From assembly GCF_006345805.1 (NCBI RefSeq), contig NC_043006.1, positions 102,486,001 through 102,550,000 on the forward strand: a DNA stretch of 64,000 nt. The letters run 5' to 3'. This stretch comes from Octopus sinensis (lineage: Eukaryota). A program made the position numbers and the translations under genes. This document shows positions 16,696 to 59,687 of this stretch, piece by piece. The notes under the pieces are model-generated. The model searched no databases and was not told the DNA's origin. It worked only from the letters and a program-made list of their open reading frames with translations. Position 1 is the first letter of the stretch. Every line of letters starts with the position of its first letter.

Positions 16696-16863
16696 TCAAC
16701 TTGTGGCACTGATTTCTTTCAACTTATGTTTTTCAAGATTTTTTACTCGCCAACTTTCCATCTCTATTAAATTCATGGCATTAAAAGATTTACCCAAGTT
16801 CTTCAAATCATTGTTACCATTCGTTTGCCATTGTACTCGGGCACAATTCTCATCAACAGACAT
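16696..16863 (-). CDS. SAT-like gene A exon 5 (terminal): MSVDENCARVQWQTNGNNDLKNLGKSFNAMNLIEMESWRVKNLEKHKLKEISATS*
   Basis: ttgcag acceptor in phase 0; aligns with the SAT1 last exon (C....N......K...A..L...E.WR); TGA at 16696-16698; total spliced CDS 522 nt, 173 aa. Confidence 0.9.
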   Translation of the reverse strand: MSVDENCARVQWQTNGNNDLKNLGKSFNAMNLIEMESWRVKNLEKHKLKEISATS

Positions 16864-17082
16864 CTGCAATGAGGGATGGAAAAGAAAAACAAAACAAATA
16901 AAAGCTATGACTTATGAAGATTTTGTTGTTAAATAATAATGCGCACATCATGAAAAATGAGATATTTTTCATGTATTTAATGTCCATTTTTCCATGCTAC
17001 CATGGACTGGATAAGAACTTATTTCAGGTATATTTTATGCCCTGATGCTATTTGTCTTGAACTCTTACTAGTTTTTCAAGTA

Positions 17083-17592
17083 CCATAAATCTTTGAGTAT
17101 AGTCCGCCCTTGAGTATAATATGCAGGGGATTTTTAGGGGGCTGTACCTCAGAAAAACCTAAACCTTGTGCATAATACGCACTCCTTCTCTAACCTGAGT
17201 TGTGCGTAATTAAGCCAGTAGCACCTAGTCGAACAAACACTTCCGCGCAAGCGTAATACAATAATGGTGATGTTCTTAACTGTTATATGGGAATGTAAAT
17301 ATGTTTGCAAATTGTCTTTGTTACATGTTATTCTGTGTTCTGAATACTTTTATTTTAATAAATGTTGCTTACTGCAAGTTATGGATGATTCTTTTATGAC
17401 TTCATTGCTTTCAGGCTTAGCTTAAGGTATTTTCGTGCCCGACATCACAAAATGCATTGCCGGACAGCAAATAGAGATTCGGACATTGCTTAGAAGATAT
17501 TTTTCCTTTTTAACCTTGTATATAGTACGCACTAGGGATTTTGACCTTTAAATTTTGGGGAAAAAATGCGGATTGTACTCGAAGATTTACGG
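17083..17592. mobile_element. pogo/Tigger-like MITE in gene A intron 4
   Basis: TA-flanked; TIRs CCATAAATCTTTGAGTATAGTCCGC ... GCGGATTGTACTCGAAGATTTACGG. Confidence 0.8.
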
Positions 17593-18898
17593 TATCTTCT
17601 CTTTTACTTATTTCAGTCACTGGACTGCAGCCATGCTGGGGCCTTGAAGTGCTGAAGAAATTGATCAGCCCCAACTACTTTTTTTTTTTAAGCCTGATTA
17701 CTTATGCTATCAATCTCTTTTGCTGAACTGCTATCTTACAGGGATGTAAACAAACCAGCACCTGTTGTCAAACACTGATGAAGAATAAACAAACTAAAGA
17801 AACACACACAATGGGCTTCTTTTAGTTTCCATCAACCAAATCTACTTGCAAAACTTTAGTTGGCTAGGGGCCACAATAGAAACAGTTACTTGCCCAAGGG
17901 GCTGCACAGAGGCTGAACTCAAGCCACATCTGGGATCTTTTTTATCCAACAAGAACTCAAAGGAATGGAGTAACCATTCATAGCACCAACATGGAATGTA
18001 AACATCAACACCACACCATTCTGGTGGTAACAAATGAAACTGTGGAATATCAACAGTCATGTACATTTGCATGTGTGCATGCACTCACACACACACACGA
18101 GATAAGCTTCTTACAGTTTCCATTGACCAAATTCACATAAGGCATTATTTAGCTTGGAAACTATAGAAGTACACTTACTAATGACAATATTTCTATTTGA
18201 AAAAAGGAAATCTTTCCTGAAATATTATAGGATCATTAAAACAACCTATATTAAATAAAACAGTATATGCACAGCATGGGATTGAACCTAAAACCACAAT
18301 TTTGAAGCTAACTTCTTAACCACAGTCATGCCTACGTAATATATTCAGTATATCAAATTGTTATATAGACATGCCCTTGGACAAGGTTATATTACCCATT
18401 TTGTCTTTCAAAGCGCAACCTGCACACCAAAGCTCCAAGGACAAGAGAGCTTATATAAGGGTCAAGTTCCAGAGTTTTATCAAAACTACCAACCCCTTGA
18501 TATAGCGGTCACCCTTCCCCACATTATAATTTCCTTCACTCATATCAATACTTCTCCTAAAATCATTCTTCTTCAAATTTGTTCCTGCTTCTATTCCTTC
18601 CCTATCAATATTTTGTCACAATACTGTTGTTCTACACACAGAAAGGAAAAAAAAAAGGAAAAACCCACCTCTTATATTAGGTGGCTAATAACATTTTTAT
18701 TTGAAAAGGACAAATATTTCCTGAAATATTATAGAATCATTAAAACAACCTATATTAAATAAAACAGTAGCCTTTCTCATTGTTTATTTGAATTACTCAA
18801 AATTTAAAAAAATTCTTTTTTCCGAACATATCATTTAAAAACGTACTGCAATGCTTTAAGCAAATTACAATACAAAGACAAAAAATAATTCTATTTAC

Positions 18899-19059
18899 CT
18901 TGCACAGGAAATGAAAGAGATCTTCACAGATGGACTCATATTCTGGTAGTGGTAACACGTACATGTCAGTTATTTCTATAGACTTGCTTTCCCATGTGGA
19001 GTATATGTAGTGGTAGAACATATATCCGACCAGTGGCCCCGTGCTTGGTCTGTTGTCTG
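18899..19059 (-). CDS. SAT-like gene A exon 4: ADNRPSTGPLVGYMFYHYIYSTWESKSIEITDMYVLPLPEYESICEDLFHFLCK
   Basis: ttctag acceptor, AAG/gtaaat donor; 161 nt; aligns with SAT1 [26 protein letters not shown]...KNLSQ. Confidence 0.92.
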
Positions 19060-19101
19060 CTAGAAAATCACAATGACAACTCAAACAATGAGCATGCAAA
19101 T

Positions 19102-19152
<51 letters not shown>

Positions 19153-19264
19153 TACATTGCTATTATTAAAGCTACAAAAACATTAAAAAAAACTGCTACT
19201 CAGAGTTTCATGTTCCTGTTCGTCAGAGAGTTAAGATTGAGAATTTTTGCAGCTTTGCTCATCA

Positions 19265-19745
19265 TTCATCATCATCATCGTTTTGCGTCCGTTTTCCATG
19301 CTAGCATGGGTTGGACGGTTCAACTGGGGTCTGTGAAGCCAGAAGGCTGCATCAGGCCCAGTCAAATCTGGCAGTGTTTCTACGGCTGGATGCCCTTCCT
19401 AACGCCAACCACTCCGTGAGTGTAGTGGGTGCTTTTTACGTGCCACCTGCACAGGTGCCAGACAGAGCTGGCAAACGGCCACGAACGGATGGTGCTTTTT
19501 ACGTGCCACCGGCACGAGGCCAGTCGGGGCGGCGCTGGCAACGGTCGCGAAACGGAAGGTTCTCTTACATGCCACCAGCACTGGTAACACATCTGCAATT
19601 TCCATTGATCGATTTCGATTCTGATCCTCACTTGCCTCAACAGGTCTTCACAAGTAGAGTTTTGTGTCCCAAGAAGGGAAGGTATGCATACGTAGGCTGG
19701 CTCCATCCCATGTAGAAGGCCACGGGTTATGGACTCACTTGTCAC
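19265..19745 (-). mobile_element. Short element sharing the RTE LINE 3' UTR and (GAT)n tail
   Basis: Homologous to 33740-34113; shorter copies at ~3010-3170, 7395-7520, 11520-11670, 24880-25147. Confidence 0.75.
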
Positions 19746-20210
19746 ACATACGACCAAAACGCCCCCCCATCCAATGGTCGGTGCTGAGTTGTCAAACATT
19801 TAAACCAAATTTTCTCAAAACAACTTGTCCGACTGTCCCATAGACCTCCCCTTTGAGAAACGCTGATTTAACCTAAATTTGAGACACCAGCAAAATAAGA
19901 AATAAAGATAGACTTTTTTCTATTCCAAAGAAAAATGATTTTCTTCACACAAATATGCAACCGAAGTTTTTCTTGCGTACGCATAGTAATGATCACAACA
20001 GCTGATGTACTTACACATACAAATGCACGTTCCCACGGCTTTATTGATCGCATTCTCACCTGGAATCGATTTTTGTAATTTTTTCAAGACTTATACACGC
20101 CCTGATACCGTCGGTATCTACATATGAAATCTGAGCACAATTGGATGGAGGATGCCCGAGATCCTAGAAGACACACTCACAGACAGACAGAACGGATTTT
20201 ATATAATAGA
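19745..20210 (-). mobile_element. Probable non-autonomous Helitron-like insertion
   Basis: Ends TTTTATATAATAGAT after an ACAGACAGACAG tract, like the other Helitron 5' ends; absent from copy B; left boundary uncertain. Confidence 0.45.
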
Positions 20211-20797
20211 TATATTAACAGAAGCTCAGCAAAGGAATGAATGGAAAATTCACATACAAGACATGGATGGTCTCTTTCCTTGTCAGTTATTATCCAAAAA
20301 GTCTTCATAATTTCATGCCCAACAGCAAAAAGCTGTGGATGGTAAGTAAATGTTCCTTAATGCTTAATTTTGCTTCAATCAGTCTTGAATGTGAAATAAT
20401 AATAGGAAGGTAATCCAGCTGTAGAACCCTTACCAGATCAGATTGGAGCAGTGAACGCTGAGGACAATCACGAAAACAAACACGACACGTAAATGTGAAT
20501 ATACAAACACACACTTCAGCAAGACACCTTCTCCTGTCCCTCTATCATAGTTTCATATCCCTTAATTATTATACCCCACTCAATTCAGGGGTCTTGTCTT
20601 GCAGGTACATGGTGACCTCACCAGTGAAGGGGTTATAAAAAAAAAAAATAGCACCCACTACACTCTGAAGAGTGGTTGGTGTTAAGAAGGTCATCCAGTC
20701 ATAGAATCCAACACAGACACAGTCAAGTCAGCTGCCAACACAGAGAAGTTGGCTGCCGAGACAGAGACAAGACGGCAACACTGAACAAAAACCTCAC

Positions 20798-20878
20798 CTT
20801 TTGAAGGATCTTTATGATTCCATTCAGCAACGAGGATATTAGATAAGTTCTCTCCATTGAAGCAGTGGGTTTTTAGAT
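20798..20878 (-). CDS. SAT-like gene A exon 3: DLKTHCFNGENLSNILVAEWNHKDPSK
   Basis: ttctag acceptor, G/gtgagg donor; 81 nt, phase 1-1; aligns with SAT1 DLLEDGFGEHPFYHCLVAE. Confidence 0.9.
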
Positions 20879-21371
20879 CTAGAATAAAGTAGACATAAAA
20901 ATATAACCATTAGTTGGCTTGTTTCCTCTTCAACTACTGTTACAATACAAACATCATCTTCATCATCATTTAACATCTGTTATTCATGGGTTGGACAGTT
21001 TGACCACGGCTGATTTGGCATGGTTTCTATGGCTGGATGCCCTTCCTAACACCAACTACTCCAAGAATGCAATGGGTGCTTTTACGTGGCACCAGCACAG
21101 GCACCAGTTGCATGACACCAGTATCTGTCATGACTAGGATTTCACTCGGCTTTATGGGTTTGCTTCTCAAGCACAGCATATTGCCAAAAGTCTTGCTCAT
21201 TTGTCATTGCCTCCAGGAGGCCCAACGCTCGAAAGGTGCTTTCTGTGTGCCAGTTATGTGATGCTGGCATCGGCAAGATTGCCTCCATGAGGCCCAATGC
21301 TCAACAGGTGCTTTTTACATGCCACCGGCACAGGTGCTAAATAAGCTAAATAATATCTTCTTTATAAAACA

Positions 21372-21728
21372 CTAGCAGTATCGCCCGGCGTTGTAAGGGA
21401 AATAACTATATAAGCATTTTTAGAGAGTTATAGCCAAAAAATGCATTAAAAATGGAAAAAAAATGATGGTAAATTTTTTTTTAAATCGTTGACTCATCAT
21501 AGACATTTTTAGAGAGTTATATAATATCGAAAAAATGCATTAAAATGGATAAAAATGATGGTAAATTTTTTTTTAAATCGTAGACGCGCGCTAATACCCA
21601 GAAGGGCTCGATATGAATCACGACTATAAGATACCCGGTTTTGGTTACACTGCACCGCAAAATGTGGGAGTAGTTAGGAATCTAAATCGTAGGAGACAGA
21701 CACACAACTTGACTTTTATATATAAAGA
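21372..21728 (-). mobile_element. Non-autonomous Helitron, same family, only in duplication copy A
   Basis: Reverse-complement termini TC...CTAG between A and T; empty site near 55230 in copy B. Confidence 0.8.
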
Positions 21729-22375
21729 TTATGGTTCAGTTTTAGTTTCCATCCTCTGTACCTCAATACAATCTTGCAAACCTTCCACCCACCCACTTCT
21801 ACACACCTCTTGTCTTGAACTTAATTCACAGAGCTTTCTGTGTATGTGGTATATTATGAAGAACTGCAACCAGTGGTGAGAAGCAGTGAGTCATGTCTAA
21901 CCAATGCCAACATGGAAAAGGTAGACGTAAAACAGGGACCATGAGGATACATAAATCAGATGAATTTTAACAAATGGAATTAACCCTTTTGCATTTAAAC
22001 CAGCCAAAATATTCTGCATGTTTTATGTTCAAACTGACTTGATCTGGCCTCTCACACCTACCCAACAATGTCATTCGAAAAATAAGCAATCACATTATCA
22101 AAGTTTGAGATAATGATTGATTAATTCAAAACAATGAAAATAAATAAGTATTACATTTGACAGAGTAGTCTGAATGCCAAAGTGTTAAATTCAGATCACA
22201 AAGAGTCAGAAATTCATACCAGCTGATTGGTCCAAATACACCAACCTTCATGCTTTGGTGACTAATAAGCAACCAAGCAACAAAACTAAATCTTCATGTT
22301 TGTAAATGCACCAATTATTATTTCCCATTCAAGACTGACTGGAGCAAAGTTAAGCATTAAGGAACATTTACTTAC

Positions 22376-22421
22376 CATCCACAGAAGGTGGCGTTCTCTT
22401 TTCTCCAGCTTTTACTCGTTC
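22376..22421 (-). CDS. SAT-like gene A exon 2: ERVKAGEKRTPPSVD
   Basis: tattag acceptor, G/gtaagt donor; 46 nt, phase 0 to 1 like SAT1 exon 2; duplicated at 57311-57356. Confidence 0.88.
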
Positions 22422-22479
22422 CTAATATAGAAAACCAAAATATATTCTTATTATAGAACATTAGTTATACATTGAACAA

Positions 22480-22700
22480 GTATGTACATACGAGTGTGTG
22501 TGTATATGTGTATATATATAGTTAATCCAAACAAGAAAACAAAAAAAACACAGCAACGCGAGGACGTGGAACAAATAAAGTATTATTGGACGCTCAGGAA
22601 AGAAGGGTTTAACGTTTCGAGCGGAGCTCTTCGTCGGAAACATAGATGGAAAGATCCTGAGAAGGGAAGACAGAGGAAAAAAAAGGGTGAAATATAATTA
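22480..22700 (-). mobile_element. Penelope-like terminal-repeat fragment with a hammerhead-like core
   Basis: Minus strand GUUU-CCGACGA-AGAGCUCCGCUC-GAAAC-GUU-AAAC at 22607-22641; a more degenerate relative near 52860-52900. Confidence 0.5.
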
Positions 22701-23719
22701 ATTTAATAAAATTAATAAATTTCACCTAGTAGTTTTATCGGTATGGAAAAGACCATAATTGGTAAGGATTATATTAATCATAATAAAGGGTTAATTGCAA
22801 CAAGTTGCTCAAAACCACATACCGAAAATATTAGAAATAGCAGCCAAATAGGTCACCATTTCTCCTACAAGTAAAAAAGTCTCCACAAACAAACAGAATT
22901 TGCAACCCGTATATGGCAAAGAGAAAGAAAATAACAAAATCACAGCCTATTTGGATTAATTATAGACGAAAATTCGTCGCCTGTCAAGCCGGTATAGTAG
23001 GTGAGTCTTTTTTCCCCTAGCATTTCTAGATTTATAGGAAATATTATATATATATATATATATCTCAATTCAGTTTGGTTATGGACCTTGTAGTTTGCTT
23101 TGTACAGATCATCCATGGGTATTGGTTACAAGGTGCAGTTTTACAATGAAAACTGACTGTTTTAAGAGCCATCCAGGAATCCTTGAATATCCATAGAGTA
23201 TGCTGTAAAAACCCATGTAATTTACGCACTTTTTTGCAAAAACAAAAACAAACTTTAGTGTGTGTGTAAATTACATGATTAATTAGTTTCCAGAATTTTT
23301 TAGAAATTCTTTTCTGTTGAAAAATGATGTACAAATGTAAACATTCATACCAGAAGTTGACTCATTTAATGTCAGAATAGGGTTTTTTTTTACAGAAAAA
23401 ATATAATGAAGTTGACTTATTTATGCTGGATGGTAAAATGCTTACTTTTTCAGTATAAATTTACTAAATGGTTAATTACTTTTTGAAGTTTGATGTTCAT
23501 GTTGATAATCATGGTCTGGGCCATATTTTACATTGCTTGGAGTTTCTACCTATCACAATAGAGCCCAGCAATTTCCTTAAATAGATCAGTTTTTCTCCGC
23601 TTAAGAAGTCTAGCTTGTGTTTGCCTCCACGAAGCTATTGCTCATTTTCTCCATATTAAGACAATGAAATTCATCACTGCCAACATCACCTCTACCAGCT
23701 CTTACTGCATCTAATGCTG

Positions 23720-24035
23720 ACACTGCTGAAACCTCCTTTGGTCATGACTGACCATGGGATTGCACCTAGAAAGTTACCCTCCCAGGCACAAGTCTGGGCA
23801 ATGTTGCTTATGGAAGACCAGCAGTCGCCCATACATACCAGCCTGCCCTCTCCATGCCACCAGTGTTATCCAACGGAAAAGCAAAGGTCGATACAGCTTG
23901 GTACCTGTGACGTCTACAGCTGAGTGAACTGGAGCAACATGAAATAAAATGCCTTGCTCAAGAACACAATTCGAACTCACAACCTCACAATCGTAAGCTC
24001 ACTGCTCTAACCACTGAGCCATGCGCCTTCACAAC
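23720..24035 (-). mobile_element. SINE in gene A intron 1
   Basis: GAAGGCGCATGGCTCAGTGGTTAGAG tRNA-like head on the minus strand; flanking GCTGACA repeat as possible TSD. Confidence 0.75.
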
Positions 24036-27000: not shown

Positions 27001-28404
27001 AATGAGTTTAAATTTTAATTTTTGTGTATCTTTCCAGCATCTGTTCAGCATTATGTCCATTTAGCTTCTTGTCCCTTGGCAAAAGTGCATTCAGTATCCT
27101 GTCCATGTACTGCCAACCACATAATAGAAGGTACTGGATATTCCCGTTTCATGACACCAGCACTAGTGAGGTTGCCATGTAACGAACTTAGTATAGAGGC
27201 AGGCAGCTCTAGGCTAGATGTTGAAAGGCTAAATCATGACAAAAGGGGCAAGAACAGGTTTCTTGCTGTAGATGAGACACATGGCTTCCTCTTAATATAT
27301 GGTGAGAATAACTGAGGCTGGAGCTGGAAAGATGAAAGAGTGAGAGGGTGGGGATAGAAGAACAGGATGTGGGGGGGGGTAGTTGGGAACAGAAATTACA
27401 AAAGTATATGGGATGGTTGGTTAATGAAATACAATGAATTAAGTTTGGTGATGAAAAAAAAATGGTGGATGAATATTTACAGGAAAAGGAATGGTTATTT
27501 TCTAATATCTAATCCTTTTGATATCAATCCTCTTGAAATTGCCCCAGGATCTTTCACCAAAATTCCATGCTAAATCCTGTTCCAAATATCAACTTAATAA
27601 TGACTAAATTATTTAAAATTTTTTTTCACCTTGATCAAAATTTATTGAAACAAAGACTATAATTTTAACAGAAATATCTTAATGAAAATGTTAGGAAACA
27701 TCTATGTTTATGTGAACCAGACATTATATCATTTGCAAGTTTGTTTGTTAAACTAGCACTCTGACAAGGGTCCCAGTTGATCTGATCAATGGAACAGTCT
27801 ACTTGTGATATTAATGTGCAAATGGCTGAGCACTCTACAGACATGGGTATCCTTAATATAGTTCTCAGGGAGATTCAGTAGAACATAATGTGACAAGGCT
27901 GGTCCTTTGAAATATGGGCACAACTCATTTTTGCCAGCTGAGTGGACTGGAGCAACACGAAAAAGCATCTTGTCTAAGAACACAATGGGAATAGAACTGA
28001 TGAACACTCAGCCACGCATAGAATGCACTATAATAAGTTTTAGCATTTGAGAAGTTTGGTTCTCACCCTCATGGGTTTAGTCCCACTACATGGCACCTTG
28101 GACATGAGACTTATACTATAGTTCTGGGCCAGAACTTGTGAATAAGAGATCCCTAACATAAAAAAAAAACAGGTAAGGGTGGGGAAAATGGAAGGGTGTG
28201 TGGCTGTAAAATAATGCCTCAATAACAAATTAATTTAACCCATGCTAACATGGAAAAACAAAAACAAAATCTATTTTGATAAGTGCTTGTAACTCAAAGT
28301 GTTTCCGATTTTGGAATGATTGAATATTTTCATTTATATAAAAATAGCAACACCATTAGCATGAGACCTCTGTGTAAACACACTTTCCCTTATACAACTT
28401 ACAG

Positions 28405-28633
28405 CAGTGGTTCTTAACCGGGGTCCATACAAGATTTTGTTGTTAAAATTGATGTGCAATAAATAGGTTATAATTCTACAATTCCCAAAATATTAAAATT
28501 TTTATACAATTCATAACATTATTTAATCATAAAAATATATGATCTTTTTTAAAACATCAAATGGCTAGAGGATCTGTCCAAGTGAAATAGGAAACAAAAG
28601 GGACCATAAGGGAAAAATGATTGTAAAACACTG
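28405..28633. mobile_element. hAT-like MITE, degenerate relative of 1355-1668
   Basis: Starts CAGTGGTTCTTAACCGGGGTCCA, ends AAAACACTG. Confidence 0.55.
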
Positions 28634-30057: not shown

Positions 30058-30123
30058 CTCGAATAACGCGATGATGAGTTGAGAGTCATCAGCTGTTGCT
30101 GGTCGCGAGACAATTACCGCCAT
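30058..30123 (-). CDS. SAT/SSAT-like GNAT gene A exon 1: MAVIVSRPATADDSQLIIALFE
   Basis: 66-nt coding exon ending GAG/gtttgt; aligns with SAT1 [22 protein letters not shown]; homologous to 59619-59687. Confidence 0.85.
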
Positions 30124-35790: not shown

Positions 35791-35826
<36 letters not shown>

Positions 35827-38412: not shown

Positions 38413-38414
38413 TT

Positions 38415-38423: not shown

Positions 38424-38529
38424 TCAAAACGAATCGCGCCTTCCCTGGAACCAGCTTCATCAACCGCGTCGAAGAATTACAGTTTGCACATCACCAGCAA
38501 CGAAGCAACTGAAAATTCCGACGAAAACA

Positions 38530-51173: not shown

Positions 51174-51341
51174 TTAGCAACTAGAACAAATTTTTTTCAG
51201 CTGATGCTTTTCAAGTTTCTTTGCAAGGCACTTTTCCACCTCTCTCGCATTCATGGCATTAAAATATTTGCCTAAGTTTTCCAAGTCATTGTTACCATTC
51301 GTTTTCCATTGCACTTGGACACAATTCTCATCAACAGACAT
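51174..51341 (-). CDS. SAT-like gene B exon 5 (terminal): MSVDENCVQVQWKTNGNNDLENLGKYFNAMNAREVEKCLAKKLEKHQLKKICSSC*
   Basis: ctgcag acceptor; 168 nt as in gene A; TAA at 51174-51176; total CDS 525 nt, 174 aa. Confidence 0.9.
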   Translation of the reverse strand: MSVDENCVQVQWKTNGNNDLENLGKYFNAMNAREVEKCLAKKLEKHQLKKICSSC

Positions 51342-51408
51342 CTGCAGGAAGAGAAAAGAGGAAAACACCCACAAATAAAAACTATGGTTTATAATGATTT
51401 TGCTGTTA

Positions 51409-52376
51409 CCATAAATCCTCGAGTATAATCTGCATTTTTTCCCAAAATTTAAAGGTCAAAATCCCTAGTGCGTACTTTATACGAGGTTAAAAAGGAAAAA
51501 TATTTTCTAAGCAATGTCCGAGTCTATTTGCTGTTCAGCAATGTTTATTCAGATGCATTTTGTGATGTCGAGCACGAAAATACCTTAAGCTAAGCCTGAA
51601 AGCAATGAAGTCATAAAAGAATCATCCATAACTTGCAGTAAGCAACATTTATTAAAATAAAAGTATTCAGAACACAGAATAACATGTAACAAAAACAATT
51701 TGCAGACATACTTACATTCCCATATAACAGTTAAGAACATCACCATTATTGTATTACGCTTGCGCAGAAGTGCTTGTTTGACTATGTGCTGCTGGCTTAA
51801 TTATGCATGAATTGTGCTTAATAGTTTAGTGCTAAATAGTTCATCCTGCTGTTTCTATTGACAATTTGCATTATTACCGTGGCAAAAAATAGATACTTAA
51901 TTAAATACCAGTTTTAAATGTTTGAACTACTGTGGGTCTTTACTAGGGTTTTTTATAAACGGGACTTAAACCTGTAAATTAATCTCCAATAAAACATTTT
52001 ATACATTACTTGCCCATAAAATGCCTCATAGATCTTATTCAGCTATGTTTAAACTTGAAGTTATATCATATGCTGAAGAGCATGGTAACAGGGCCGCCAG
52101 AAGAAAATTTGGTGTTGACGAAAGCAATGTCAGGTTATGGAGAAGAAATAAAGATGAAATTAAACAGATGCCAAAGATAAAGAAGTCAAGAAGGTAATAA
52201 TAAAGGACATTACCGTATACATTTTTATAAACCAAGGACGTTATATAGACCCCCTTGACTAAAGTTAGAGAAGGGGTGTGTATTATACACAAGGTTTAGA
52301 TTTTTTCAGAGGTACAGCCCCCTAAAAATCCCCTGCGTTTTATACTCAAGGGCAGACTATACTCGAGGAGTTACAG
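51409..52376. mobile_element. pogo-like internally deleted DNA transposon, same family as 17083-17592, opposite orientation
   Basis: TA-flanked TIRs; shares internal sequence with the MITE; carries a transposase N-terminal ORF. Confidence 0.85.
52021..52197 (+). CDS. 58-aa Brinker-type HTH DNA-binding domain of a pogo transposase (truncated)
   Basis: MPHRSYSAMFKLEVISYAEEHGNRAARRKFGVDESNVRLWRR matches the pogo/BrkDBD pattern; expression unknown. Confidence 0.6.
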   Translation: MPHRSYSAMFKLEVISYAEEHGNRAARRKFGVDESNVRLWRRNKDEIKQMPKIKKSRR

Positions 52377-53109
52377 TAAATAAAAATGCAGACATCATTA
52401 AAAGTAAAGTATGAGATTAATTCTTTTATTTAATGTCCATTTTTCCCTGCTACTAAGGTGTAGATGAGGACTTATGTCAGGTAAGATGACCAGATGCCGT
52501 TACTGTTTTTCAAGCATCTTATCTTTTATTTGTTTCAGTCCCCGGGCTACAACTATGCTGGGGTACAGTCTAGAAGGGCAGAAGAAATTGACCCCAATAC
52601 TTATTTTTTTTTTTAAAGCCTGATACTTATTTTATCAGTCTCCTTTGCTAAACTACTGTATTACAGCGATGTAAGCAAACCAACACTGGTTGTCAAGTGC
52701 TGGTGGGGGAGAAACAACATGAAGGCCCACATATATTCGCACACACAGCTATATATGTGTATATATATATATATATATATAGTTCAAACTTATAGAAAAT
52801 GGAAGAATAAGACAAGTATAGGAACAACAAGAAGGTGTATTAGTTTAACACTTGGGAAGAATGGAAAAGTCTTTTACGTTTTGAGTCTATGCTCTTCAAC
52901 AGAAAGGATTAAGGGTGGCAAAAAAAAAACAGAGAGAGAAATAAATGTGCAGGGTTCAACGGTCCAACATGATGAGATGACTGGAAAGCCATAACGGATG
53001 TGACAAAGGAGCATATTTAGCTCCATGTGGTCAATAAAAGCAACAGCGCAATAGGAAGTGCAAGGAATATCAATGCTGTATATGGGGATCAGACAATAAG
53101 CATAAGCCA

Positions 53110-54062
53110 GTATCAACGGTGGTTCCAGAAATTCTGAGCAGGAAACTACAGCCTAGAGGATGAGCCTCATCCTGGAAGATCTATAGAGCTTGATAAGGGT
53201 GTCCTGCAAACCCTGGTAGAACAAAATCCCATTGTAACTGTTGAGGAACTAGCACAGAAGCTTGAATTTGGTCATTCCACCATTCATTGACACTTGTGTG
53301 CCATTGGAGAAGTCAGAAAATTGTGTCAAAGGGTTCCTTGCAAACCTTCTGAGTCTAATCACATGCAGAGAGTGAATGTGTGCTCTTCTTTGCTGTCACG
53401 TCTCTGAAATGAAACTTTTGGGGACCAAATAGTGACTGGTAACAAGAAATAGGTTCTCTATAAAAGTGTGAAGTGCTGAAGACTGTGGGTAGGGAAAGGA
53501 GAAACACGGACACATCAGGCTAAAGAAGGTCTTCACCCACATAAGATGTTGTATTCTATTTGGTGGGATATGAAAAGTTTAGCCTACTTTGAACTTTTAA
53601 ATCCAAACCAAACAATAACAAAGGAGATCTACTGTGAGCAGCTTGAGTGGCTTAAGTCAGCGTTAGGAGAAAATTGATAATCTTTCAAGATGAAAGATGT
53701 TCTATCAGGATAGTGCTTGGCCACATACAGCAAGGATGACATTTCAAAGGCTGAAACGATACCCCACCTACGATATTCACTGAACATTGTCCCATCTGAT
53801 TATCATTTATTCCACAATCTTCAAAATCATTTGGATGGAAAAAGTATGAATTCTGTAGATGAGGTCAGAACAGTACTGGAGGAGTATTTTTTGTCATGGA
53901 CAAATGGATTTTCAAAAAAGGGCCTTGCAAGACTACCACATAGATGGAAGAGCATTGTAGAAAATGGAGAGTATATTTTTGATTAAAAAAGAACTTTGTT
54001 TATCTTAGTTTTGAAAAATAAAAGAATTATAAAATCCTCATTATATATGGGATGACCCAATA
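53110..54062 (+). mobile_element. Decayed mariner transposase fragment with right TIR, in gene B intron 4
   Basis: IVTGNKK, IWWD, HLRYSLNIVPSDYHLFHNLQNHL, RWKSIVENGEY (mariner YSPDLAPSDYHLF region); TIR-like GGATGACCCAATA at the end; absent from copy A. Confidence 0.88.
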
Positions 54063-54246
54063 TTATAGGATCATTAAAACAATGTATATTAAATAAAACA
54101 GTACCTTTTCTTATTGTTTGCTTACCTGAATTGCTCAAAATGAGAAGAAAAAAAAAAGAATTTTTCTCAAACATCTCATTTACACATATTGCAATCGTTT
54201 AAACAAATTACAATACAAAGAAAAAAATAAACTAAATTTGTATTAC

Positions 54247-54407
54247 CTTGCACAGGAAATGAAAGAGATCTTCACAGATGGACTCATATTCTGGTAGTGG
54301 TAACACGTACAGGTCAGTTATTCGTATAGTCATGCCTTCCCCTGAGGAGAATTGGTATTGGTAGAACATATATCCAACCAGTGGCCCCGTGCTTGGTCTG
54401 TCGTCTG
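54247..54407 (-). CDS. SAT-like gene B exon 4: ADDRPSTGPLVGYMFYQYQFSSGEGMTIRITDLYVLPLPEYESICEDLFHFLCK
   Basis: 161 nt; ttctag acceptor, AAG/gtaata donor; open frame. Confidence 0.92.
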
Positions 54408-54673
54408 CTAGAAAATCACGACAATTGTAAGAATGTGCATGTGAATATATAAACAGAAGCTCGACAAAGGAACAGATGGAAAATTCGCACACAAGACGTG
54501 GAGGTGCTCTTGTCTCATCAGTTATCATTCAAAAGGTCATTACAGTTTCACACCTTTAATGATAATATTGTTTATTTTTAGTTGTGTCAACAACAAAAAG
54601 CCGTTTGGGAATAATGAGCACACGTCAAGGACAGTAATGTAAACAAATGTGACACATGAACGTGAATATACAA

Positions 54674-54715
<42 letters not shown>

Positions 54716-55045
54716 ATGCATGCACGCACGCATGCACACACACACATGCATGCACGCACACACATTTCAGCAAGATACCTTCTCCTGTCCCTCTATCATA
54801 ATTTCATATCCCTGAGTTACATGCCAATCAGTTGAGGGGTCCTGTCTTGCAAGTACTTGGTAACCTCACCATTGCAAGGGCCACAAAAAATAGCACCCAC
54901 TACATTCTGTGAAGTGGTTGGTTTTAAGAAGTGCATCCAGTCATAGAATCCAACACAGACACAGTCAAGTTTGCTGTCAACACAGAGATGTGCCAGCTGG
55001 CCACCGAGACAGAGAGAAGAATGCAACACTGAACAAAAATCTCAC

Positions 55046-55126
55046 CTTTTGAAGGATCTTTATGATTCCATTCAGCAATGAGGATATTAGATAAGTTCTC
55101 TCCATTGAAGCAGTGGGTTTTTAGAT
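55046..55126 (-). CDS. SAT-like gene B exon 3: DLKTHCFNGENLSNILIAEWNHKDPSK
   Basis: 81 nt; one difference from gene A (V/I); intact ag/gt. Confidence 0.9.
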
Positions 55127-55899
55127 CTAGAATAAAGTAGACATAAAAATATAACCATTAGTTGGCTTGTTTCCTCTTCAACTACTGTTATAGTATGAAC
55201 GAATAAGCTAAATAATATCTTCTTTATAAAACATTAACAGTTGCAGTCTTCCTTCTCATCTCCTGTCCTCCATAAATACCTTCCACTCACCCACTTCTTC
55301 TCACGTCTTGCCTTGATGGGTGGAGGTCACCAGGACTCCTCATCTCCACTGCTTATTTCTTCAAAGCTCTAACTGATCATTCTCTTCCACTCTTACTAAA
55401 TGTGAGTAGCCATAACACTCTAAAGAACCTCCTCTGGCCACACCCAACCCACTCTCATTCTTTAACCCCTTGTTCTTTACTATAAAACTGATTCCCAACT
55501 TCTTGGGGTTCATAGTGTTGCAAGCAACAAGGTGACCTCACTAGTGCTGGTGTCATGAAAAAAAAAATGATGATGTAAAGTGGTTGGTGTTAGTAAGGTA
55601 ACAAAGACTAGTAATTTCAGTTTTCTTCTGTAGATAAAAAAGGGCGGGGGGGGGGAAACCCTCAATCAAATATCAGTCATGTCTACATAAAGTTTACTTT
55701 ACACAAAACTGAATATAAAAGCCAGGGTTTGGAGTAGTAATGCTAGCTTAAGCAGTTTCTTTCCCTGAGAAAAGGTTTTACTCAAAACTCCAGAACTGAC
55801 ATCCCTTGCCAATAAATGTACTTTTTCATTTCTGCCAACTTCATTAAATGCTAATCAGCAAAGAATATTTTAATGTACTTGATTATTTATTTTTTTGTT

Positions 55900-56470
55900 C
55901 ACTATTTGCTGGGTTTGTGGGGAGGTGCAGTGCCCATGGCCTTCAGAAGCTCACCTCAATCAGTGAGATTGATGCCATTAAGGTTCCACTTGAATCTTTG
56001 CAAGTCAACATCTGAAGATGAGACATCAGCATGAATAGAATTCCAAGAAGGCCAACATTTTGGTGTAATGATTATTACAGGACCTCCTGGAGTCGGACAA
56101 AAAAAGGGTGATGAGAGGAAAAGATGAGTAGGACAGGAACGTTTGAGTGGAGTGAAGTAGAAAGGCCACTATGATAACACTAGTAGAAGAAGCACAGAGA
56201 GGTGACAGTACATCAGTAGGCCAGAACCTGGAGTGAGTCTGTAAGTGATTTTGTGCAAATCATTCAAAATAGCCATTTTCATGATGCAGTCTAGAACGTG
56301 TGTATGTGTGTGTTGCAGCAGCACTGTCCTAGATGTGAAAGCAACACTCTACTGCAGGCCTCACCTGAGCTTTGTAGAGTGTCACTAACAGTTGGAGATT
56401 GAAGTATATTCCAGCCTTGAAGAGGCTCACTCAAACAGAACTCACACAACAAATATCAGCAGGTTTTATT
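55900..56470 (-). mobile_element. Highly decayed CR1/L2-like LINE C-terminal fragment
   Basis: TLYKAQVRP..EC.FHI* resembles LY...VRP.LEY...W; otherwise very degenerate. Confidence 0.45.
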
Positions 56471-57310
56471 TATTATCTTTTAGTCACAAGAGAAGGCAGT
56501 GTCTATGACTTGTTACAGATCCTCTGACATTGGTGAAAGGGAGGAAGGCATCTTCAAATTGAAAGCCTGGTCCATGCAACAGAATGGACTTCAATAAAAG
56601 CACCCAAGGTGCCAGGTGGCAAATGTGTAGGTCAAGGCTGGATTTGAGCTTGGAATGTCAAGCACTGCAAGGTCTTGGGTCCAACATTCTTACATTTTGG
56701 CCAATCCACTATTCCAAAAGGATGAAAGCAAAAGTAACCTCAGCCACTCTTGAACTTAATTCACAGAGCTTTCTGTGTATGTGGTAGATTATGAAGAACT
56801 GCAACCAGTGGTGAGAAGCAGTGAGACATGTCTAACCAATGCCAGCATGGAAAAGGTAGACGTAAAACAGGGGCAATGAGGATACATAAATCAGATGAAT
56901 TTTAACAAATGGAATTAACCCTTTTGCATTTAAACCAGTCCCAAATATTCTGCATGTTTTATGTTCAAACTGACTTGATCTTGCCTCTCACACCTACCCA
57001 ACAATGACATTCGAAAAATAAGCAATCACATTATCAAAGTTTGAGATAATGATTGATTAATTCAAAACAATGAAATAAATAAGTATTACATTTGACAGAG
57101 TAGTCTGAATACCAAAGTGTTAAATTCAGATCACAAAGAGTCAGAAATTCATACCAGCTGATTGGTCCAAATACACCCACCTTCATGCTTTGGTGACTAA
57201 TAAGCAACCAAACAACAAAACTAAATCTTCATGTTTGTAAATGCACCAATTATTATTTCCCATTCAAGACTGACTGGAGCAAAGTTAAGCATTAAGGAAC
57301 ATTTACTTAC

Positions 57311-57356
57311 CATCCACAGAAGGTGGCGTTCTCTTTTCTCCAGCTTTTACACGTTC
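57311..57356 (-). CDS. SAT-like gene B exon 2: ERVKAGEKRTPPSVD
   Basis: Same splice sites as gene A exon 2; one synonymous difference (CGA/CGT). Confidence 0.88.
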
Positions 57357-57701
57357 CTAATATAGAAAACCAAAATATATTCTCATTATCAAACACCAGT
57401 TAAACTCTATAATTAGAATTAATTGTAAGTTTCATATATTCTATATTATTAAGGCATCTAATTATGAAGATTACAATTTTCTTATTATAGCTTTTTTGAA
57501 CACGTCAGCACCAAAAAGATCCAATTCTTTGATCAGTTTGATTTCTCATGAACAAATAATTCCCTGTCTTTCTTTAATCACATTGGTCATTCATTGGTCA
57601 TTCTTGATCACTCAGTGCTTTTGACACCCAACATTATCACCTCGTTATCTTTCAGAGAAAAGTTAAATTCAATAATTTATTGATGCAGACATGGTTCCAA
57701 G

Positions 57702-57742
<41 letters not shown>

Positions 57743-57754
57743 CTTTATTGCCCA

Positions 57755-57968
57755 CAAGGGGCTAAACATAGAGGGGACAAACAAGGACAGACAAAGGGAT
57801 TAAGTCGATTACAACGACCCCCAGTGCGAAACTGGTACTTTATTTATCGACCCCGAAAGGATGAAAGGCAAAGTCGACCTCGGCGGAATTTGAACTCAGA
57901 ACGTAGCGGCAGACGAAATACCGCTAAGCATTTCGCCCGGCGTGCTAACGTTTCTGCCAGCTCGCCGC
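57755..57968 (-). mobile_element. SINE, GGTGAGCTGGCAGAA family, inserted within a (TA)n tract
   Basis: Reverse complement of the 1098-1318 family; CpG-retaining, so probably young. Confidence 0.88.
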
Positions 57969-57971
57969 CTT

Positions 57972-57987
57972 ATATATATATATATAT

Positions 57988-58033
<46 letters not shown>

Positions 58034-58037
58034 TACA

Positions 58038-58098
<61 letters not shown>

Positions 58099-58112
58099 CA
58101 TCTATATATATA
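57972..58112. repeat. (TA)n microsatellite
   Basis: Directly visible; similar tracts at 12230-12295, 19105-19153, 23045-23063, 35793-35823, 57707-57738. Confidence 0.95.
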
Positions 58113-58114
58113 TC

Positions 58115-58587
58115 ACCTTGACCGACCAGTCCATTGGGTGTCCATTAGACTCCGCTGGTCACAGCATGCTGTTCAGTCCTCTCTGGATCGCGCCTTTCTC
58201 ATCCACGTGATCCCAATCTTCCTCCAGAAATTGTAACTCCACCGTCGTGGAGGCCTTCCGGGTGGTTGTTTCCGCTTGTGCGGGTACCACTCGACAACTG
58301 CGCGGGTTGACCAATTATCGGTGAGCCGGGCGACGTGTCCAGCCCATCTATACTTGCTGCGTCTATACTCTGCAATGACATCCATCATGCCGGACTTCTT
58401 TCTGATGATCTCGCTACTGATGTGCTCTCTCAATGAGATACCAAGCATTGACCTTTCCATGGCTCTTTGAGCCGTTACCAATCTCTGCTCTTCATTCTTT
58501 TTGGTAGCCCATGTTTCACGACCATATAACATTGCAGGTAGAACTGCACTGTTAATGATGTTGGCACAGGTGGTCCTGTCCAACCTT
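58115..58587 (-). mobile_element. RTE-type LINE 3' fragment in gene B intron 1
   Basis: VLPAMLYG.ETW, QRAMERSMLG, KYRWAGHVAR, GRPPRRW. Confidence 0.85.
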
Positions 58588-58591
58588 ACCT

Positions 58592-58630
<39 letters not shown>

Positions 58631-58844
58631 AATGTCTTTTATCTCTTACTTGTTTCAGTCATTAGTCTATGGCCAAGCTGGGGCACCACCTTGAAATTTT
58701 TGTCAAACTAATCAGCCCCAGTAGTTATTTTATTTTTTAAGCTTGATACTTATTCTATGAATCTCTTTAGCTGAACTACTAAGTTATGGGGACGTAAACA
58801 TACCAACACCGGCTGTGAAGTAATGGTGGGTGATAAACAGAAAG

Positions 58845-58861
58845 ATACACACACACACTAC

Positions 58862-58930
<69 letters not shown>
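58845..58930. repeat. (CA)n microsatellite
   Basis: Directly visible; another at 54675-54765. Confidence 0.95.
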
Positions 58931-58933
<3 letters not shown>

Positions 58934-59618
58934 GTATGAACTCCTGTATTTAAAACACAAATTTGCAGAAATTTTCTGATAAGTTCAAAAGAAAAAGTTA
59001 TGAGTTATATGAGGTGCTTAAGCAAAAATTCCATGTGTGTATGTACACACACACACACATGCACACTACACACACACACAAAATAGTGAACAAGGGTTAC
59101 AATAATATTCAATAAATTTAATACAATTCCTCATATTTTGTTAGGTAGAGGTTAGCATTTGTTTTGAATTGTATTATTCTGAAATACTTTTTTATCAGAA
59201 ATTACATTAAATTTCACTAAATATATTTTGAGAGAGTTGACAAAAGAGAAAAAAAATCACATAGGATAGGTACAGTTGCAACATGTACATTCAAAGTTCT
59301 TCAAGCATGCAAAATGGGCAGTCAAGTATTTTTCAATATTTTTGTTTTTTGCATTATTTTGCTTTGGACTGTAAAGTTGAATGCTCAGCAAAGGAGCGCA
59401 TGAAAAGAGATGCAATGCAAGATCTGATTGTCATTTTGTTATTTGGACAACTAAAGAAATATAATATGACGAGCTCCCTTTGTTCATAATGAAAAAATGC
59501 TGCAGTTTTGGCTGTCATAATAAAGGAAATTACTCGAAGATTTTATGATACTAAGATATATTTTAGCCCCACAAATTAATTAACAACTAAAAGTTCAGTT
59601 AAAGTATTGAGCACATAC

Positions 59619-59687
59619 CTTGAATAAACCAGTAATGTGCTCACAGTCACCAGGTATTGCATACCGCGAAACAGGTACTGCTATCAT
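59619..59687 (-). CDS. SAT-like gene B exon 1: MIAVPVSRYAIPGDCEHITGLFK
   Basis: 69 nt ending AAG/gtatgt; retains SAT-like R.A...DC..I..L.K. Confidence 0.87.

What the first reader, a model, noticed from the sequence alone, without database searches (positions are those of the whole stretch)
16696..59687. Tandem pair of intact SSAT-family genes that appear catalytically dead (GNAT pseudoenzymes)
Seen: two complete spliced ORFs (173 and 174 aa) with canonical splice sites. Exon sizes are 66(69)/46/81/161/168 nt, and the intron positions and phases match my recollection of human SAT1 (66/52/84/102+41/171). In an ungapped alignment from D93 to Q115, the acetyl-CoA pyrophosphate loop R101-G-F-G-I-G106 becomes E-Y-E-S-I-C in both copies. 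E92 becomes T, and catalytic Y140 (NFYK) aligns to G (NLGK). Established: GNAT motif A (R/Q-x-x-G-x-G/A) binds CoA, Y140 is the SSAT1 general acid, and SSAT is an obligate dimer with the acceptor site between subunits. Inference: these proteins are kept for a non-catalytic role, such as amine/polyamine binding, sensing or sequestration, or as regulatory heterodimer partners of an active SSAT.
Basis: partly seen in the sequence, partly recalled or inferred. Interest (0 to 1): 0.88.

Follow-up and report, generated by a model that had tools for sequence, protein, structure and literature searches.

The report
Octopus SSAT-like genes lacking catalytic motifs
Two intact octopus genes (part of a three-gene tandem array) encode proteins with the fold of the polyamine-acetylating enzyme SSAT; they have lost every residue known to bind acetyl-CoA or catalyse transfer, yet are conserved and expressed, so they are probably non-enzymatic relatives of an enzyme whose real job is unknown.

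Summary
On the minus strand lie two complete five-exon genes, c1 (16696-30123, 173 aa) and c2 (51174-59687, 174 aa). Exon sizes are 66(69)/46/81/161/168 nt and all splice sites are AG/GT. The window is Octopus sinensis.

Both proteins are SSAT relatives by sequence (SAT2, E 4e-10) and by predicted fold (TM 0.83 to human SSAT). RGFGIG is replaced by EYESIC, E92 by T and Y140 by G. These positions are almost invariant in 73 other family members. Pfam finds no acetyltransferase domain.

The genes are not decaying:
- dN/dS is 0.24-0.53, below 1 in at least 98% of bootstrap resamples.
- Orthologues exist in O. bimaculoides, O. vulgaris and Argonauta, with related degenerate copies in cuttlefish.
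- Published O. maya RT-qPCR primers span the exon 2/3 junction.

Corrections to the finding:
- It is a triplet. A third intact copy lies just outside the window.
- The acceptor site is remodelled too, so polyamine binding is not favoured.
- RefSeq merges the array into chimeric isoforms.

"Catalytically dead" is a strong inference, not shown. The non-catalytic function is unknown. This is a new member of a known kind, the GNAT pseudoenzymes.

The parts
30058..30123 (-). c1 exon 1 (ATG; MAVIVSRPATADDSQLIIALFE), 66 nt, ends in phase 0
   Evidence: donor GTTTGT
22376..22421 (-). c1 exon 2 (ERVKAGEKRTPPSVD), 46 nt
   Evidence: AG/GTAAGT. Lies in a 655-bp tract 97% identical to c2
20798..20878 (-). 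c1 exon 3 (DLKTHCFNGENLSNILVAEWNHKDPSK), 81 nt
18899..19059 (-). c1 exon 4, 161 nt. Holds beta3-beta4, ITD (E92->T) and the degenerate motif A PLPEYESICEDL
16696..16863 (-). c1 exon 5, 168 nt including the stop. Holds degenerate motif B with NLGK (Y140->G)
59619..59687 (-). c2 exon 1 (ATG; MIAVPVSRYAIPGDCEHITGLFK), 69 nt
57311..57356 (-). c2 exon 2, 46 nt, same peptide as c1 exon 2
55046..55126 (-). c2 exon 3, 81 nt
54247..54407 (-). c2 exon 4, 161 nt (ITD; PLPEYESICEDL)
51174..51341 (-). c2 exon 5, 168 nt including the stop (NLGK; W154 also lost)
21813..22467 (-). Gene-conversion tract (97% identical to 56748-57402, against about 73-91% for the other aligned blocks). Covers exon 2 and an intronic SINE-like repeat
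43..10436 (+). 3' exons of the neighbouring thimet-oligopeptidase-like (Peptidase_M3) gene. The same neighbour lies beside the orthologues in O. bimaculoides and Argonauta (synteny anchor)

Best explanation
c1 and c2, together with c3 just outside the window, belong to a coleoid-cephalopod clade of paralogues derived from an SSAT/thialysine-acetyltransferase ancestor. They keep the SSAT-type GNAT fold but no longer work as acetyl-CoA-dependent N-acetyltransferases.

The decay looks stepwise:
1. The sister paralogue c0 and its relatives keep an R-x-x-G-x-A/S/C loop. They have already lost E92, Y140 and the WN...FY motif B.
2. Cuttlefish copies keep only Q/N/S-K-K-S/P-V-A.
3. The octopod c1/c2/c3 genes have nothing left of the loop, and carry acidic residues where the pyrophosphate of CoA should sit.

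The proteins are made (spliced mRNA in O. maya) and are kept by purifying selection, so they do something.

Inference only: they act as small cytosolic GNAT-fold binding or adaptor proteins. They probably form SSAT-like homo- or heterodimers among the array members. A remodelled, less acidic cleft would bind a partner protein or ligand other than a polyamine, rather than transfer an acetyl group.
For: - Family membership: phmmer to SAT2 4.4e-10, with full-length alignment to SAT1. AF2 pLDDT 92, pTM 0.86. Foldseek top 24 hits are all SSAT1/SSAT2/thialysine acetyltransferases or their close bacterial relative 2fe7, TM up to 0.83. Exon structure is shared with the canonical octopus SSAT and with c0.
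- Loss of function residues: among 73 family members outside the divergent groups, position 101 is R in 71 and Q in 2; G106 is G in 71; Y140 is Y in 71 and F in 2; E92 is E in 59 and D in 8. c1 and c2 have E, C, G and T at these positions. Pfam gives no hit even at E<=10.
- Published work: substituting either glycine of RGFGIG abolishes CoA binding and activity in human SSAT (Lu et al. 1996, as cited in PMC3398536). Y140F abolishes SAT1 activity (PMC7271128).
- An active paralogue exists elsewhere: a canonical SSAT with RKIGMG, VED and FYK at C10:83.93-83.95 Mb.
- Retention: dN/dS is 0.24 for c1 orthologues (95% interval 0.12-0.45), 0.48 for c2 orthologues, 0.25-0.28 against Argonauta and 0.52 for c1 against c2. 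It is below 1 in at least 98% of bootstraps. Intact orthologues occur in O. bimaculoides, O. vulgaris and Argonauta hians, with the same neighbouring gene.
- Tree: the octopod clade has SH-aLRT support 99, octopod plus cuttlefish 95, and the clade with c0-type genes added 99.
- Expression: the O. maya 'SAT2' qPCR forward primer spans the exon 2/3 junction and the reverse primer lies in exon 4. Each has 1 mismatch to the O. bimaculoides c2 CDS. The 127-bp product fits the c1-type exon 4. The transcript's BLAST E to SAT2 was only 7.5e-11, and Ct was about 30.
Against: - No biochemical test exists. GNAT P-loops bind pyrophosphate through backbone amides.
- 14 of the 73 other family members already tolerate a non-Gly residue at position 104, so the consensus is not absolute.
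- D93 and the beta4 bulge pattern are kept.
- dN/dS of about 0.5 between c1 and c2, and for the c2 orthologues, shows weak constraint. c2 has also lost W84 and W154.
- Neither exact protein is annotated in O. sinensis.
- Expression evidence comes from a congener, and the RT-qPCR difference between stages was not significant.
- The high-confidence model leans on an alignment full of canonical SSATs.
- The proposed binding/adaptor role and dimerisation are pure inference.
Confidence: 0.65

Rival explanations
1. They are still enzymes: acyltransferases that bind an acyl donor (acetyl-CoA or another thioester) in a non-canonical way and use different catalytic residues.
For: Purifying selection. 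Preserved fold, conserved D93 and beta4 bulge. Position 104 already varies in family members that otherwise keep the active-enzyme residues. P-loop contacts run through the main chain.
Against: All hallmarks are lost together: R101, G104, G106, E92 and Y140 are substituted in c1 and c2, and the W132/N133 pair of motif B is lost or not conserved across the clade. Two Glu and an Asp sit in and after the loop, where a pyrophosphate would bind. Single substitutions at these sites kill human SSAT. Pfam's acetyltransferase models do not see the proteins.
Confidence: 0.13
2. They are non-functional duplicates on their way to becoming pseudogenes, transcribed only incidentally.
For: dN/dS of about 0.5 between the two copies and for the c2 orthologues. 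At the DNA level, exons are not much better conserved than some intron blocks. c2 has lost further conserved tryptophans. Ct of about 30 in O. maya.
Against: Open frames and all splice sites are intact in three copies and in at least four species, including Argonauta at dS>1.2. dN/dS is 0.24-0.28 on the longer comparisons, with no bootstrap reaching 1. The degenerate loop itself is conserved: PLPEYESIC, PLPQYEFIC, PLPENEAIS.
Confidence: 0.1
3. The three units are one complex locus. Its real products are the chimeric or longer isoforms in RefSeq (for example 269 aa: c3 exons 1-4 + c2 exons 2-3 + c1 exons 4-5), so the clean 173/174-aa proteins are not the main products.
For: O. sinensis RefSeq LOC115216299 isoforms X1-X4, O. 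vulgaris CAI9727440/41 and the old O. bimaculoides models all join exons of different copies. Exon phases (0,1,1,0) make every such join frame-preserving. The exact c1 and c2 proteins are not in the collection.
Against: Each unit has its own ATG exon with conserved upstream sequence, its own stop, and the same five-exon plan as the single-copy paralogues. Current O. bimaculoides RefSeq annotates c2 and c3 orthologues as separate 174- and 173-aa proteins. Argonauta has single-unit genes. Near-identical exon 2 copies invite mis-joining by read mappers. A 1.6-domain GNAT would lack a complete fold.
Confidence: 0.12

Closest known systems
Human/mouse SSAT2 (SAT2, thialysine N-epsilon-acetyltransferase) and SSAT1 (SAT1)
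   Same: Best sequence matches (E 4e-10 and about 1e-6). Best structural matches (TM 0.76-0.83). Same length of about 170 aa. Homologous intron positions with the octopus canonical SSAT gene.
   Different: Motif A RG(F/Q)GIG, E92, Y140 and W132 of motif B are all replaced. The Y27/E28 acceptor segment is deleted. Only 22-25% identity. Pfam PF00583 is not detected.
PanM/PanZ of enterobacteria (a GNAT homologue that lost acetyltransferase activity)
   Same: A GNAT-fold protein that lacks the catalytic residue and works non-catalytically, by binding a partner protein (PMC3398536).
   Different: PanM keeps motif A and needs CoA/acetyl-CoA binding for its function as a sensor. The octopus proteins have lost the CoA loop as well, so a CoA-sensing role is unlikely. 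The lineage and partners are unrelated.
Antizyme inhibitor (AZIN1/2), the catalytically dead ornithine decarboxylase paralogue (from my own knowledge)
   Same: A dead paralogue of a polyamine-pathway enzyme, retained as a regulator. It sets a precedent for pseudoenzymes in this pathway.
   Different: Different fold and pathway step. Its mechanism (trapping antizyme) is established, whereas nothing is known about partners of the octopus proteins.
Annotated orthologues: O. bimaculoides XP_052826634.1 / XP_052826633.1 'thialysine N-epsilon-acetyltransferase(-like)', Argonauta hians GAB1603423.1 'diamine acetyltransferase 2-like', Acanthosepion pharaonis CAE1317262.1 'speG'
   Same: The same genes or clade (59-96% identity for the octopod orthologues; the cuttlefish copies sit in the 95-supported clade).
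   Different: They are named as enzymes by homology transfer. No record or paper found here notes the missing catalytic and cofactor residues.

Membership tests
SSAT / diamine acetyltransferase family (GNAT superfamily) | Significant sequence similarity to SSAT1/SSAT2 over the whole domain | tested here: met
   phmmer 4.4e-10 to 2bei (SAT2). Residues 1-168 align to SAT1. Nested inside a 95-sequence SSAT family tree.
SSAT / diamine acetyltransferase family (GNAT superfamily) | SSAT-type GNAT fold | tested here: met
   AF2 pLDDT 92.2, pTM 0.86. Foldseek TM 0.83 to 2g3t/2jev. Caveat: the alignment used for the model is dominated by canonical SSATs.
SSAT / diamine acetyltransferase family (GNAT superfamily) | Motif A Q/R-x-x-G-x-G/A (acetyl-CoA pyrophosphate loop) | tested here: not met
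   E-Y-E-S-I-C in c1 and c2; E-H-K-E-N-I-L in c3. Position 101 is R or Q in 73 of 73 other members, and position 106 is G or A in 72 of 73.
SSAT / diamine acetyltransferase family (GNAT superfamily) | Catalytic pair E92 (general base via water) and Y140 (general acid) | tested here: not met
   T and G in c1 and c2; T and T in c3. A-to-I editing cannot recreate them.
SSAT / diamine acetyltransferase family (GNAT superfamily) | Recognition by Pfam Acetyltransf_1 (PF00583) or related models | tested here: not met
   0 families at E<=10 for both proteins. The cuttlefish-type relative P0009 and the c0-type P0022 still hit PF00583.
SSAT / diamine acetyltransferase family (GNAT superfamily) | Acetyl-CoA binding and amine N-acetylation | not testable with these tools
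   Needs purified protein.
SSAT / diamine acetyltransferase family (GNAT superfamily) | Obligate intertwined homodimer | not testable with these tools
   Only single-chain prediction was available. The C-terminal strand region is modelled as helix or coil in the monomer.
Pseudoenzymes (catalytically inactive homologues retained for another role) | Clear homology to an active enzyme family, with an active paralogue in the same genome | tested here: met
   Canonical SSAT with RKIGMG/VED/FYK at C10:83.93-83.95 Mb.
Pseudoenzymes (catalytically inactive homologues retained for another role) | Loss of residues essential for catalysis or cofactor binding | tested here: met
   Mutagenesis precedent.
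Pseudoenzymes (catalytically inactive homologues retained for another role) | Retention by selection, and expression | tested here: met
   dN/dS 0.24-0.53, all significantly below 1. Orthologues across Octopus and Argonauta. Junction-spanning qPCR assay in O. maya. Expression in O. sinensis itself was not checked.
Pseudoenzymes (catalytically inactive homologues retained for another role) | Measured absence of catalytic activity | not testable with these tools

The most novel reading that the evidence does not exclude
The coleoid-specific c1/c2/c3 proteins are regulatory subunits of amine acetylation. By dimerising with each other or with active SSAT-type enzymes they would poison or retarget them, making an antizyme-inhibitor-like control layer on the catabolic side of polyamine/thialysine metabolism. 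The array's phase-compatible exons would additionally be used for inter-copy splicing, diversifying these subunits as the chimeric models in three species hint.
Probability: 0.1. Interest if true: 0.75.

Novelty: new member of a known kind. Interest (0 to 1): 0.5.

Why it matters
These genes are annotated, and have been interpreted in a published octopus transcriptome study, as working diamine/thialysine acetyltransferases of polyamine metabolism. The sequence evidence says they very probably cannot bind acetyl-CoA or catalyse transfer. Pathway inferences drawn from their expression are therefore unsafe.

If inactivity is confirmed, they would add an SSAT-derived lineage to the short list of GNAT pseudoenzymes. 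They also come with a natural series of intermediates, from canonical SSAT through c0-type and cuttlefish-type to octopod-type. That series shows the order in which catalytic residues and then the cofactor loop were lost. The clade is a lineage-restricted cephalopod novelty whose function is open.

Tried and rejected
- Pfam scan of both proteins: no family at E<=10. This fits motif loss, but it meant homology had to be shown through PDB phmmer and fold search.
- RNA-editing rescue, a cephalopod-specific worry: enumerating every A-to-G change in the codons shows that R101, G104, G106, Y140 and E92 cannot be regenerated. Rejected.
- Exon 2 as an exonised transposon: the 97%-identical 655-bp block contains a SINE-like repeat with thousands of genomic copies, but the exon lies outside the repeat and the full block occurs only twice. 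Read as gene conversion, not exonisation.
- Apparent absence of exon 2 in O. bimaculoides c1: the homologous tract starts directly after a run of N, so this is an assembly gap and not biology.
- Looking for the exact c1 and c2 proteins or transcript-derived copies in the 15-billion-protein collection: not present.
- Word-based homologue search with the cuttlefish domain: only one further hit. The taxa of the unnamed SRA-derived relatives (P0009, P0022, P0032, P0034, P0044, P0061, P0095) could not be identified.
- Dimer or heterodimer modelling: not possible, because the structure tool takes single native chains only.
- Literature searches for cephalopod SSAT/thialysine pseudoenzymes and for SSAT2-HIF-1 non-catalytic roles: no usable open-access source. 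The SSAT2/HIF-1 and integrin-binding precedents therefore rest on my memory only and carry no weight in the argument.
- A dN/dS baseline for the canonical octopus SSAT was not computed.


Full report
**What is in the sequence**

Motif searches and a tblastn with human SAT1 located two collinear duplicated units on the minus strand. I rebuilt both gene models by hand.

| Copy | Exons (window coordinates) | Exon sizes (nt) | Protein |
|---|---|---|---|
| c1 | 30058-30123, 22376-22421, 20798-20878, 18899-19059, 16696-16863 | 66/46/81/161/168 | 173 aa |
| c2 | 59619-59687, 57311-57356, 55046-55126, 54247-54407, 51174-51341 | 69/46/81/161/168 | 174 aa |

All eight introns are GT-AG with pyrimidine-rich acceptors.

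**Where the window comes from, and the size of the array**

The window is G000:C10:102486001-102550000 of a 2.72-Gb genome. The contig length of 105,892,736 bp is that of the Octopus sinensis record carrying XP_036362828.1.

A genome-wide search found a third unit, c3, just beyond the window end. It lies at C10:102558646-102569018 on the minus strand. It has the same five-exon plan (72/46/81/155/168 nt), is intact and encodes 173 aa. The array is therefore c3-c2-c1, a triplet rather than a pair.

Two more family genes lie far away on the same chromosome:
- A canonical SSAT at 83.93-83.95 Mb, with R-K-I-G-M-G, V-E-D and F-Y-K.
- An intermediate paralogue, c0, at about 49.28-49.30 Mb. It has R-N-Q-G-I-C, V-D-D and Cys in place of Y140, and is also an intact five-exon gene.

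**Are they SSAT relatives?**

Yes.
- phmmer against all PDB sequences gives SAT2 (2bei) at 4.4e-10. Mouse and human SAT1 come in at about 1e-6, with an alignment over residues 1-168.
- An AlphaFold2 model of c1 has mean pLDDT 92 and pTM 0.86.
- Its 24 best PDB fold matches are all SSAT1, SSAT2 or thialysine acetyltransferases, or their close bacterial relative 2fe7. TM reaches 0.83 at 22-25% identity.
- The exon 3/4 and 4/5 boundaries coincide with those of the canonical octopus gene and of c0.
- Pfam does not recognise either protein at all, even at E<=10.

**The missing residues**

The HMMER alignment and a 95-sequence MAFFT alignment agree on these replacements:
- R101-G-F-G-I-G106 aligns with E-Y-E-S-I-C.
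- L-E92-D aligns with I-T-D.
- N-F-Y140-K aligns with N-L-G-K.

I tabulated the same columns in the 73 family members that lie outside the divergent groups.

| SAT1 position | 73 other family members | c1 / c2 |
|---|---|---|
| R101 | R in 71, Q in 2 | E |
| G106 | G in 71 | C |
| Y140 | Y in 71, F in 2 | G |
| N133 | N in 72 | N (not conserved across the clade) |
| E92 | E in 59, D in 8 | T |
| G104 | G in 59 | S |

- W132 of motif B (WN..A..FYK..GA) is gone. N133 aligns to N in c1/c2 but is not conserved across the clade.
- The alpha1-alpha2 segment that carries Y27 and E28 on the acceptor side is two residues shorter and has turned basic (ERVKAGEKRTPPSV).
- c2 has additionally lost W84 and W154.

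Published work supports the functional weight of these sites. Substituting either glycine of RGFGIG abolishes CoA binding and activity in human SSAT (Lu et al. 1996, as cited in PMC3398536). Y140F abolishes SAT1 activity (PMC7271128).

Cephalopods recode mRNAs heavily, so I checked whether A-to-I editing could restore any of these residues. It cannot. The S, C and G codons contain no A, E can only become G, and T can only become A.

**Are the genes alive?**

Selection. The table lists pairwise dN/dS (Nei-Gojobori, with bootstrap 95% intervals where computed).

| Comparison | dN/dS | 95% interval |
|---|---|---|
| c1, O. sinensis vs O. bimaculoides (156 codons) | 0.24 | 0.12-0.45 |
| c2 orthologues | 0.48 | 0.27-0.92 |
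| c1 or c2 vs the Argonauta hians gene (dS > 1.2) | 0.25-0.28 | – |
| c1 vs c2 | 0.52 | – |
| c1 or c2 vs c3 | about 0.5 | – |

Bootstraps reach 1 in at most 1.7% of replicates. This is real purifying selection, but only moderate.

Conservation. The degenerate loop itself is conserved: PLPEYESIC, PLPQYEFIC and PLPENEAIS. The orthologues in O. bimaculoides and Argonauta sit next to the same convergently oriented Peptidase_M3 (thimet-oligopeptidase-like) gene. The 3' exons of that gene occupy window 43-10436.

Phylogeny. A maximum-likelihood tree (quick search, SH-aLRT support only, motif columns not removed) gives:
- an octopod c1/c2/c3 clade with support 99;
- within it, the c3 versus c1/2 split predates Argonauta;
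- a clade with the tandem cuttlefish copies and an unnamed transcript, support 95;
- a larger clade that adds the c0-type genes, support 99.

Read along this tree, the catalytic residues and motif B were lost first, because c0-type genes still keep an R..G.A/S/C loop. The CoA loop was lost later. It is partly gone in cuttlefish (N/S-K-K-S-V-A, Q-K-K-P-V-A) and fully gone in octopods.

Expression. A published O. maya oviducal-gland study validated a Trinity transcript called "diamine acetyltransferase 2" by RT-qPCR (PMC8976471).
- Its forward primer spans the exon 2/3 junction of this gene type, and its reverse primer lies in exon 4.
- Each primer has one mismatch to the O. bimaculoides c2 CDS.
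- Neither primer matches contiguous genomic DNA.
- The stated 127-bp product is what the c1-type exon 4 predicts, since that exon is 3 nt shorter in O. bimaculoides.
- The transcript's best SwissProt hit was SAT2 at only 7.5e-11, as expected for this divergent clade. Ct values were around 30.
- RNA-seq showed higher expression in mated females. The qPCR difference was not significant.

In addition, relatives of the cuttlefish type and c0 type occur as intronless 1.4-1.9-kb contigs in SRA-derived assemblies, that is, as transcripts. One of them occurs in 112 data blocks.

**Annotation state and an oddity**

The exact c1 and c2 proteins are not in the protein collection. O. sinensis RefSeq merges the array into one locus, LOC115216299. 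Its isoforms X1-X4 join c3 exons 1-4 to c2 exons 2-3(4) and c1 exons 4(5)-5. O. vulgaris models join the c2 exon 1 to c1 exons. An old O. bimaculoides model does likewise. Current O. bimaculoides RefSeq has separate 174-aa (c2) and 173-aa (c3) proteins.

All units share exon phases, so any such join stays in frame. I cannot tell whether these are real read-through products or artefacts. Mis-joining is plausible, because exon 2 and its surroundings are 97% identical between c1 and c2 over 655 bp. That block is a gene-conversion tract which also holds a SINE-like repeat. The incomplete O. bimaculoides c1 model is explained by an assembly gap over exon 2.

**Interpretation**

Shown here:
- SSAT ancestry and fold.
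- Loss of all cofactor-loop and catalytic hallmarks.
- An active paralogue elsewhere in the genome.
- Purifying selection and conservation across octopods.
- Spliced mRNA in a congener.

Inferred:
- The proteins cannot bind acetyl-CoA or transfer acetyl groups.
- They therefore serve a non-catalytic role.

The acceptor side has also been remodelled and has lost several acidic or aromatic polyamine-site residues. Heterodimerisation with the canonical SSAT is untested.

Rivals are residual or novel enzymatic activity, slow pseudogenisation, and a complex chimeric locus. None is excluded. Their weights are given in the rival explanations section.

**Comparison with what is known**

- The closest relatives are SSAT2 and SSAT1. 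The proteins fail the functional membership criteria (motif A, E92/Y140, the Pfam model) while meeting the evolutionary and structural ones.
- Functionally, the nearest precedent is PanM/PanZ, a GNAT that lost catalysis. PanM still needs CoA binding, which these proteins have probably lost.
- Within polyamine metabolism, the dead ODC paralogue antizyme inhibitor is the conceptual precedent. That comparison rests on my own knowledge.
- I found no paper noting that the cephalopod "thialysine/diamine acetyltransferase-like" genes lack the catalytic machinery.
- The O. maya study treated its transcript as a polyamine-metabolism enzyme.

**Verdict**

This is a new member of a known kind, a lineage-restricted GNAT pseudoenzyme family with visible intermediates. 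It is moderately interesting, and biochemical confirmation is still needed.

Noticed in passing
outside the window: G000:C10:102558646-102569018 (-), i.e. 8.6-19 kb beyond the window end (loci L023-L024): Third intact array member c3 (173 aa, exons 72/46/81/155/168). Its loop is even more degenerate (SAVSEHKENILRSL), with T for E92 and T for Y140, but the GW..FK C-terminal strand is kept. Orthologues exist in O. bimaculoides (XP_052826633.1) and Argonauta.
   Followed up: yes
window 16696-59687 plus c3; RefSeq LOC115216299 isoforms X1-X4: Annotated isoforms in O. sinensis, O. vulgaris and old O. bimaculoides models join exons of different array copies (for example c3 ex1-4 + c2 ex2-3 + c1 ex4-5). 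Identical exon phases keep all such joins in frame. Whether this is real read-through splicing or an annotation artefact is undecided.
   Followed up: partly
window 21813-22467 vs 56748-57402: A 655-bp block, 97% identical between c1 and c2 where the other aligned blocks are about 73-91%, covers exon 2. It looks like a recent gene-conversion tract. Its middle (about 21977-22192) is a SINE-like repeat with thousands of copies at about 80% identity genome-wide.
   Followed up: yes
G000:C10:49277738-49295753 (+) (loci L027-L031): Paralogue c0, an intact five-exon gene with motif A R-N-Q-G-I-C, V-D-D for L-E-D, Cys for Y140 and a very acidic exon 2 (EEDDDEDLK). It is an apparent intermediate between active SSAT and the c1-c3 type. 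The Argonauta orthologue is GAB1601238.1.
   Followed up: partly
window 38341-42552 (+): Three long overlapping ORFs of an LTR retrotransposon (DUF7041 gag-like, aspartyl protease, RT, RNase H, integrase) sit in the 21-kb spacer between c1 and c2, the most G+C-rich part of the window. The sequence was neither extracted nor assembled.
   Followed up: partly
window 32297-33391 (+): A 364-aa open frame with a reverse-transcriptase domain followed by a PHD-type zinc finger: a non-LTR retroelement fragment.
   Followed up: no
window 63184-63663 (+): An open frame with a Pif1 helicase 2B-domain match, possibly a Helitron-type remnant upstream of c2.
   Followed up: no
window 43-10436 (+): 3' exons of a thimet-oligopeptidase-like (Peptidase_M3) gene, convergent with c1. 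They are 72-89% identical at protein level to Argonauta, and the same neighbour is present in O. bimaculoides and Argonauta.
   Followed up: partly
window 17203-17594 vs 51407-51807: A 400-bp segment in intron 4 of both copies is 91.6% identical but in opposite orientation. This is either a small inversion or independent insertions of the same element.
   Followed up: no
window 29217-29881; also 57970-58116 and 58845-58930: Long simple or low-complexity repeat tracts, open in all six frames, lie in intron 1 of c1 and c2.
   Followed up: no
proteins P0034/P0044 and P0061/P0095 (SRA-derived contigs, organisms unknown): Two further small lineages in the SSAT family survey also lack E92 and Y140. 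One pair also lacks R101. Similar decay may have happened more than once.
   Followed up: no
L041 6350-6359 and 9191-9764; L039 1257-2248 (O. bimaculoides CM046609.1): Assembly gaps in the O. bimaculoides array. One hides c1 exon 2 and explains the truncated RefSeq protein XP_014783682.2 (96 aa).
   Followed up: yes
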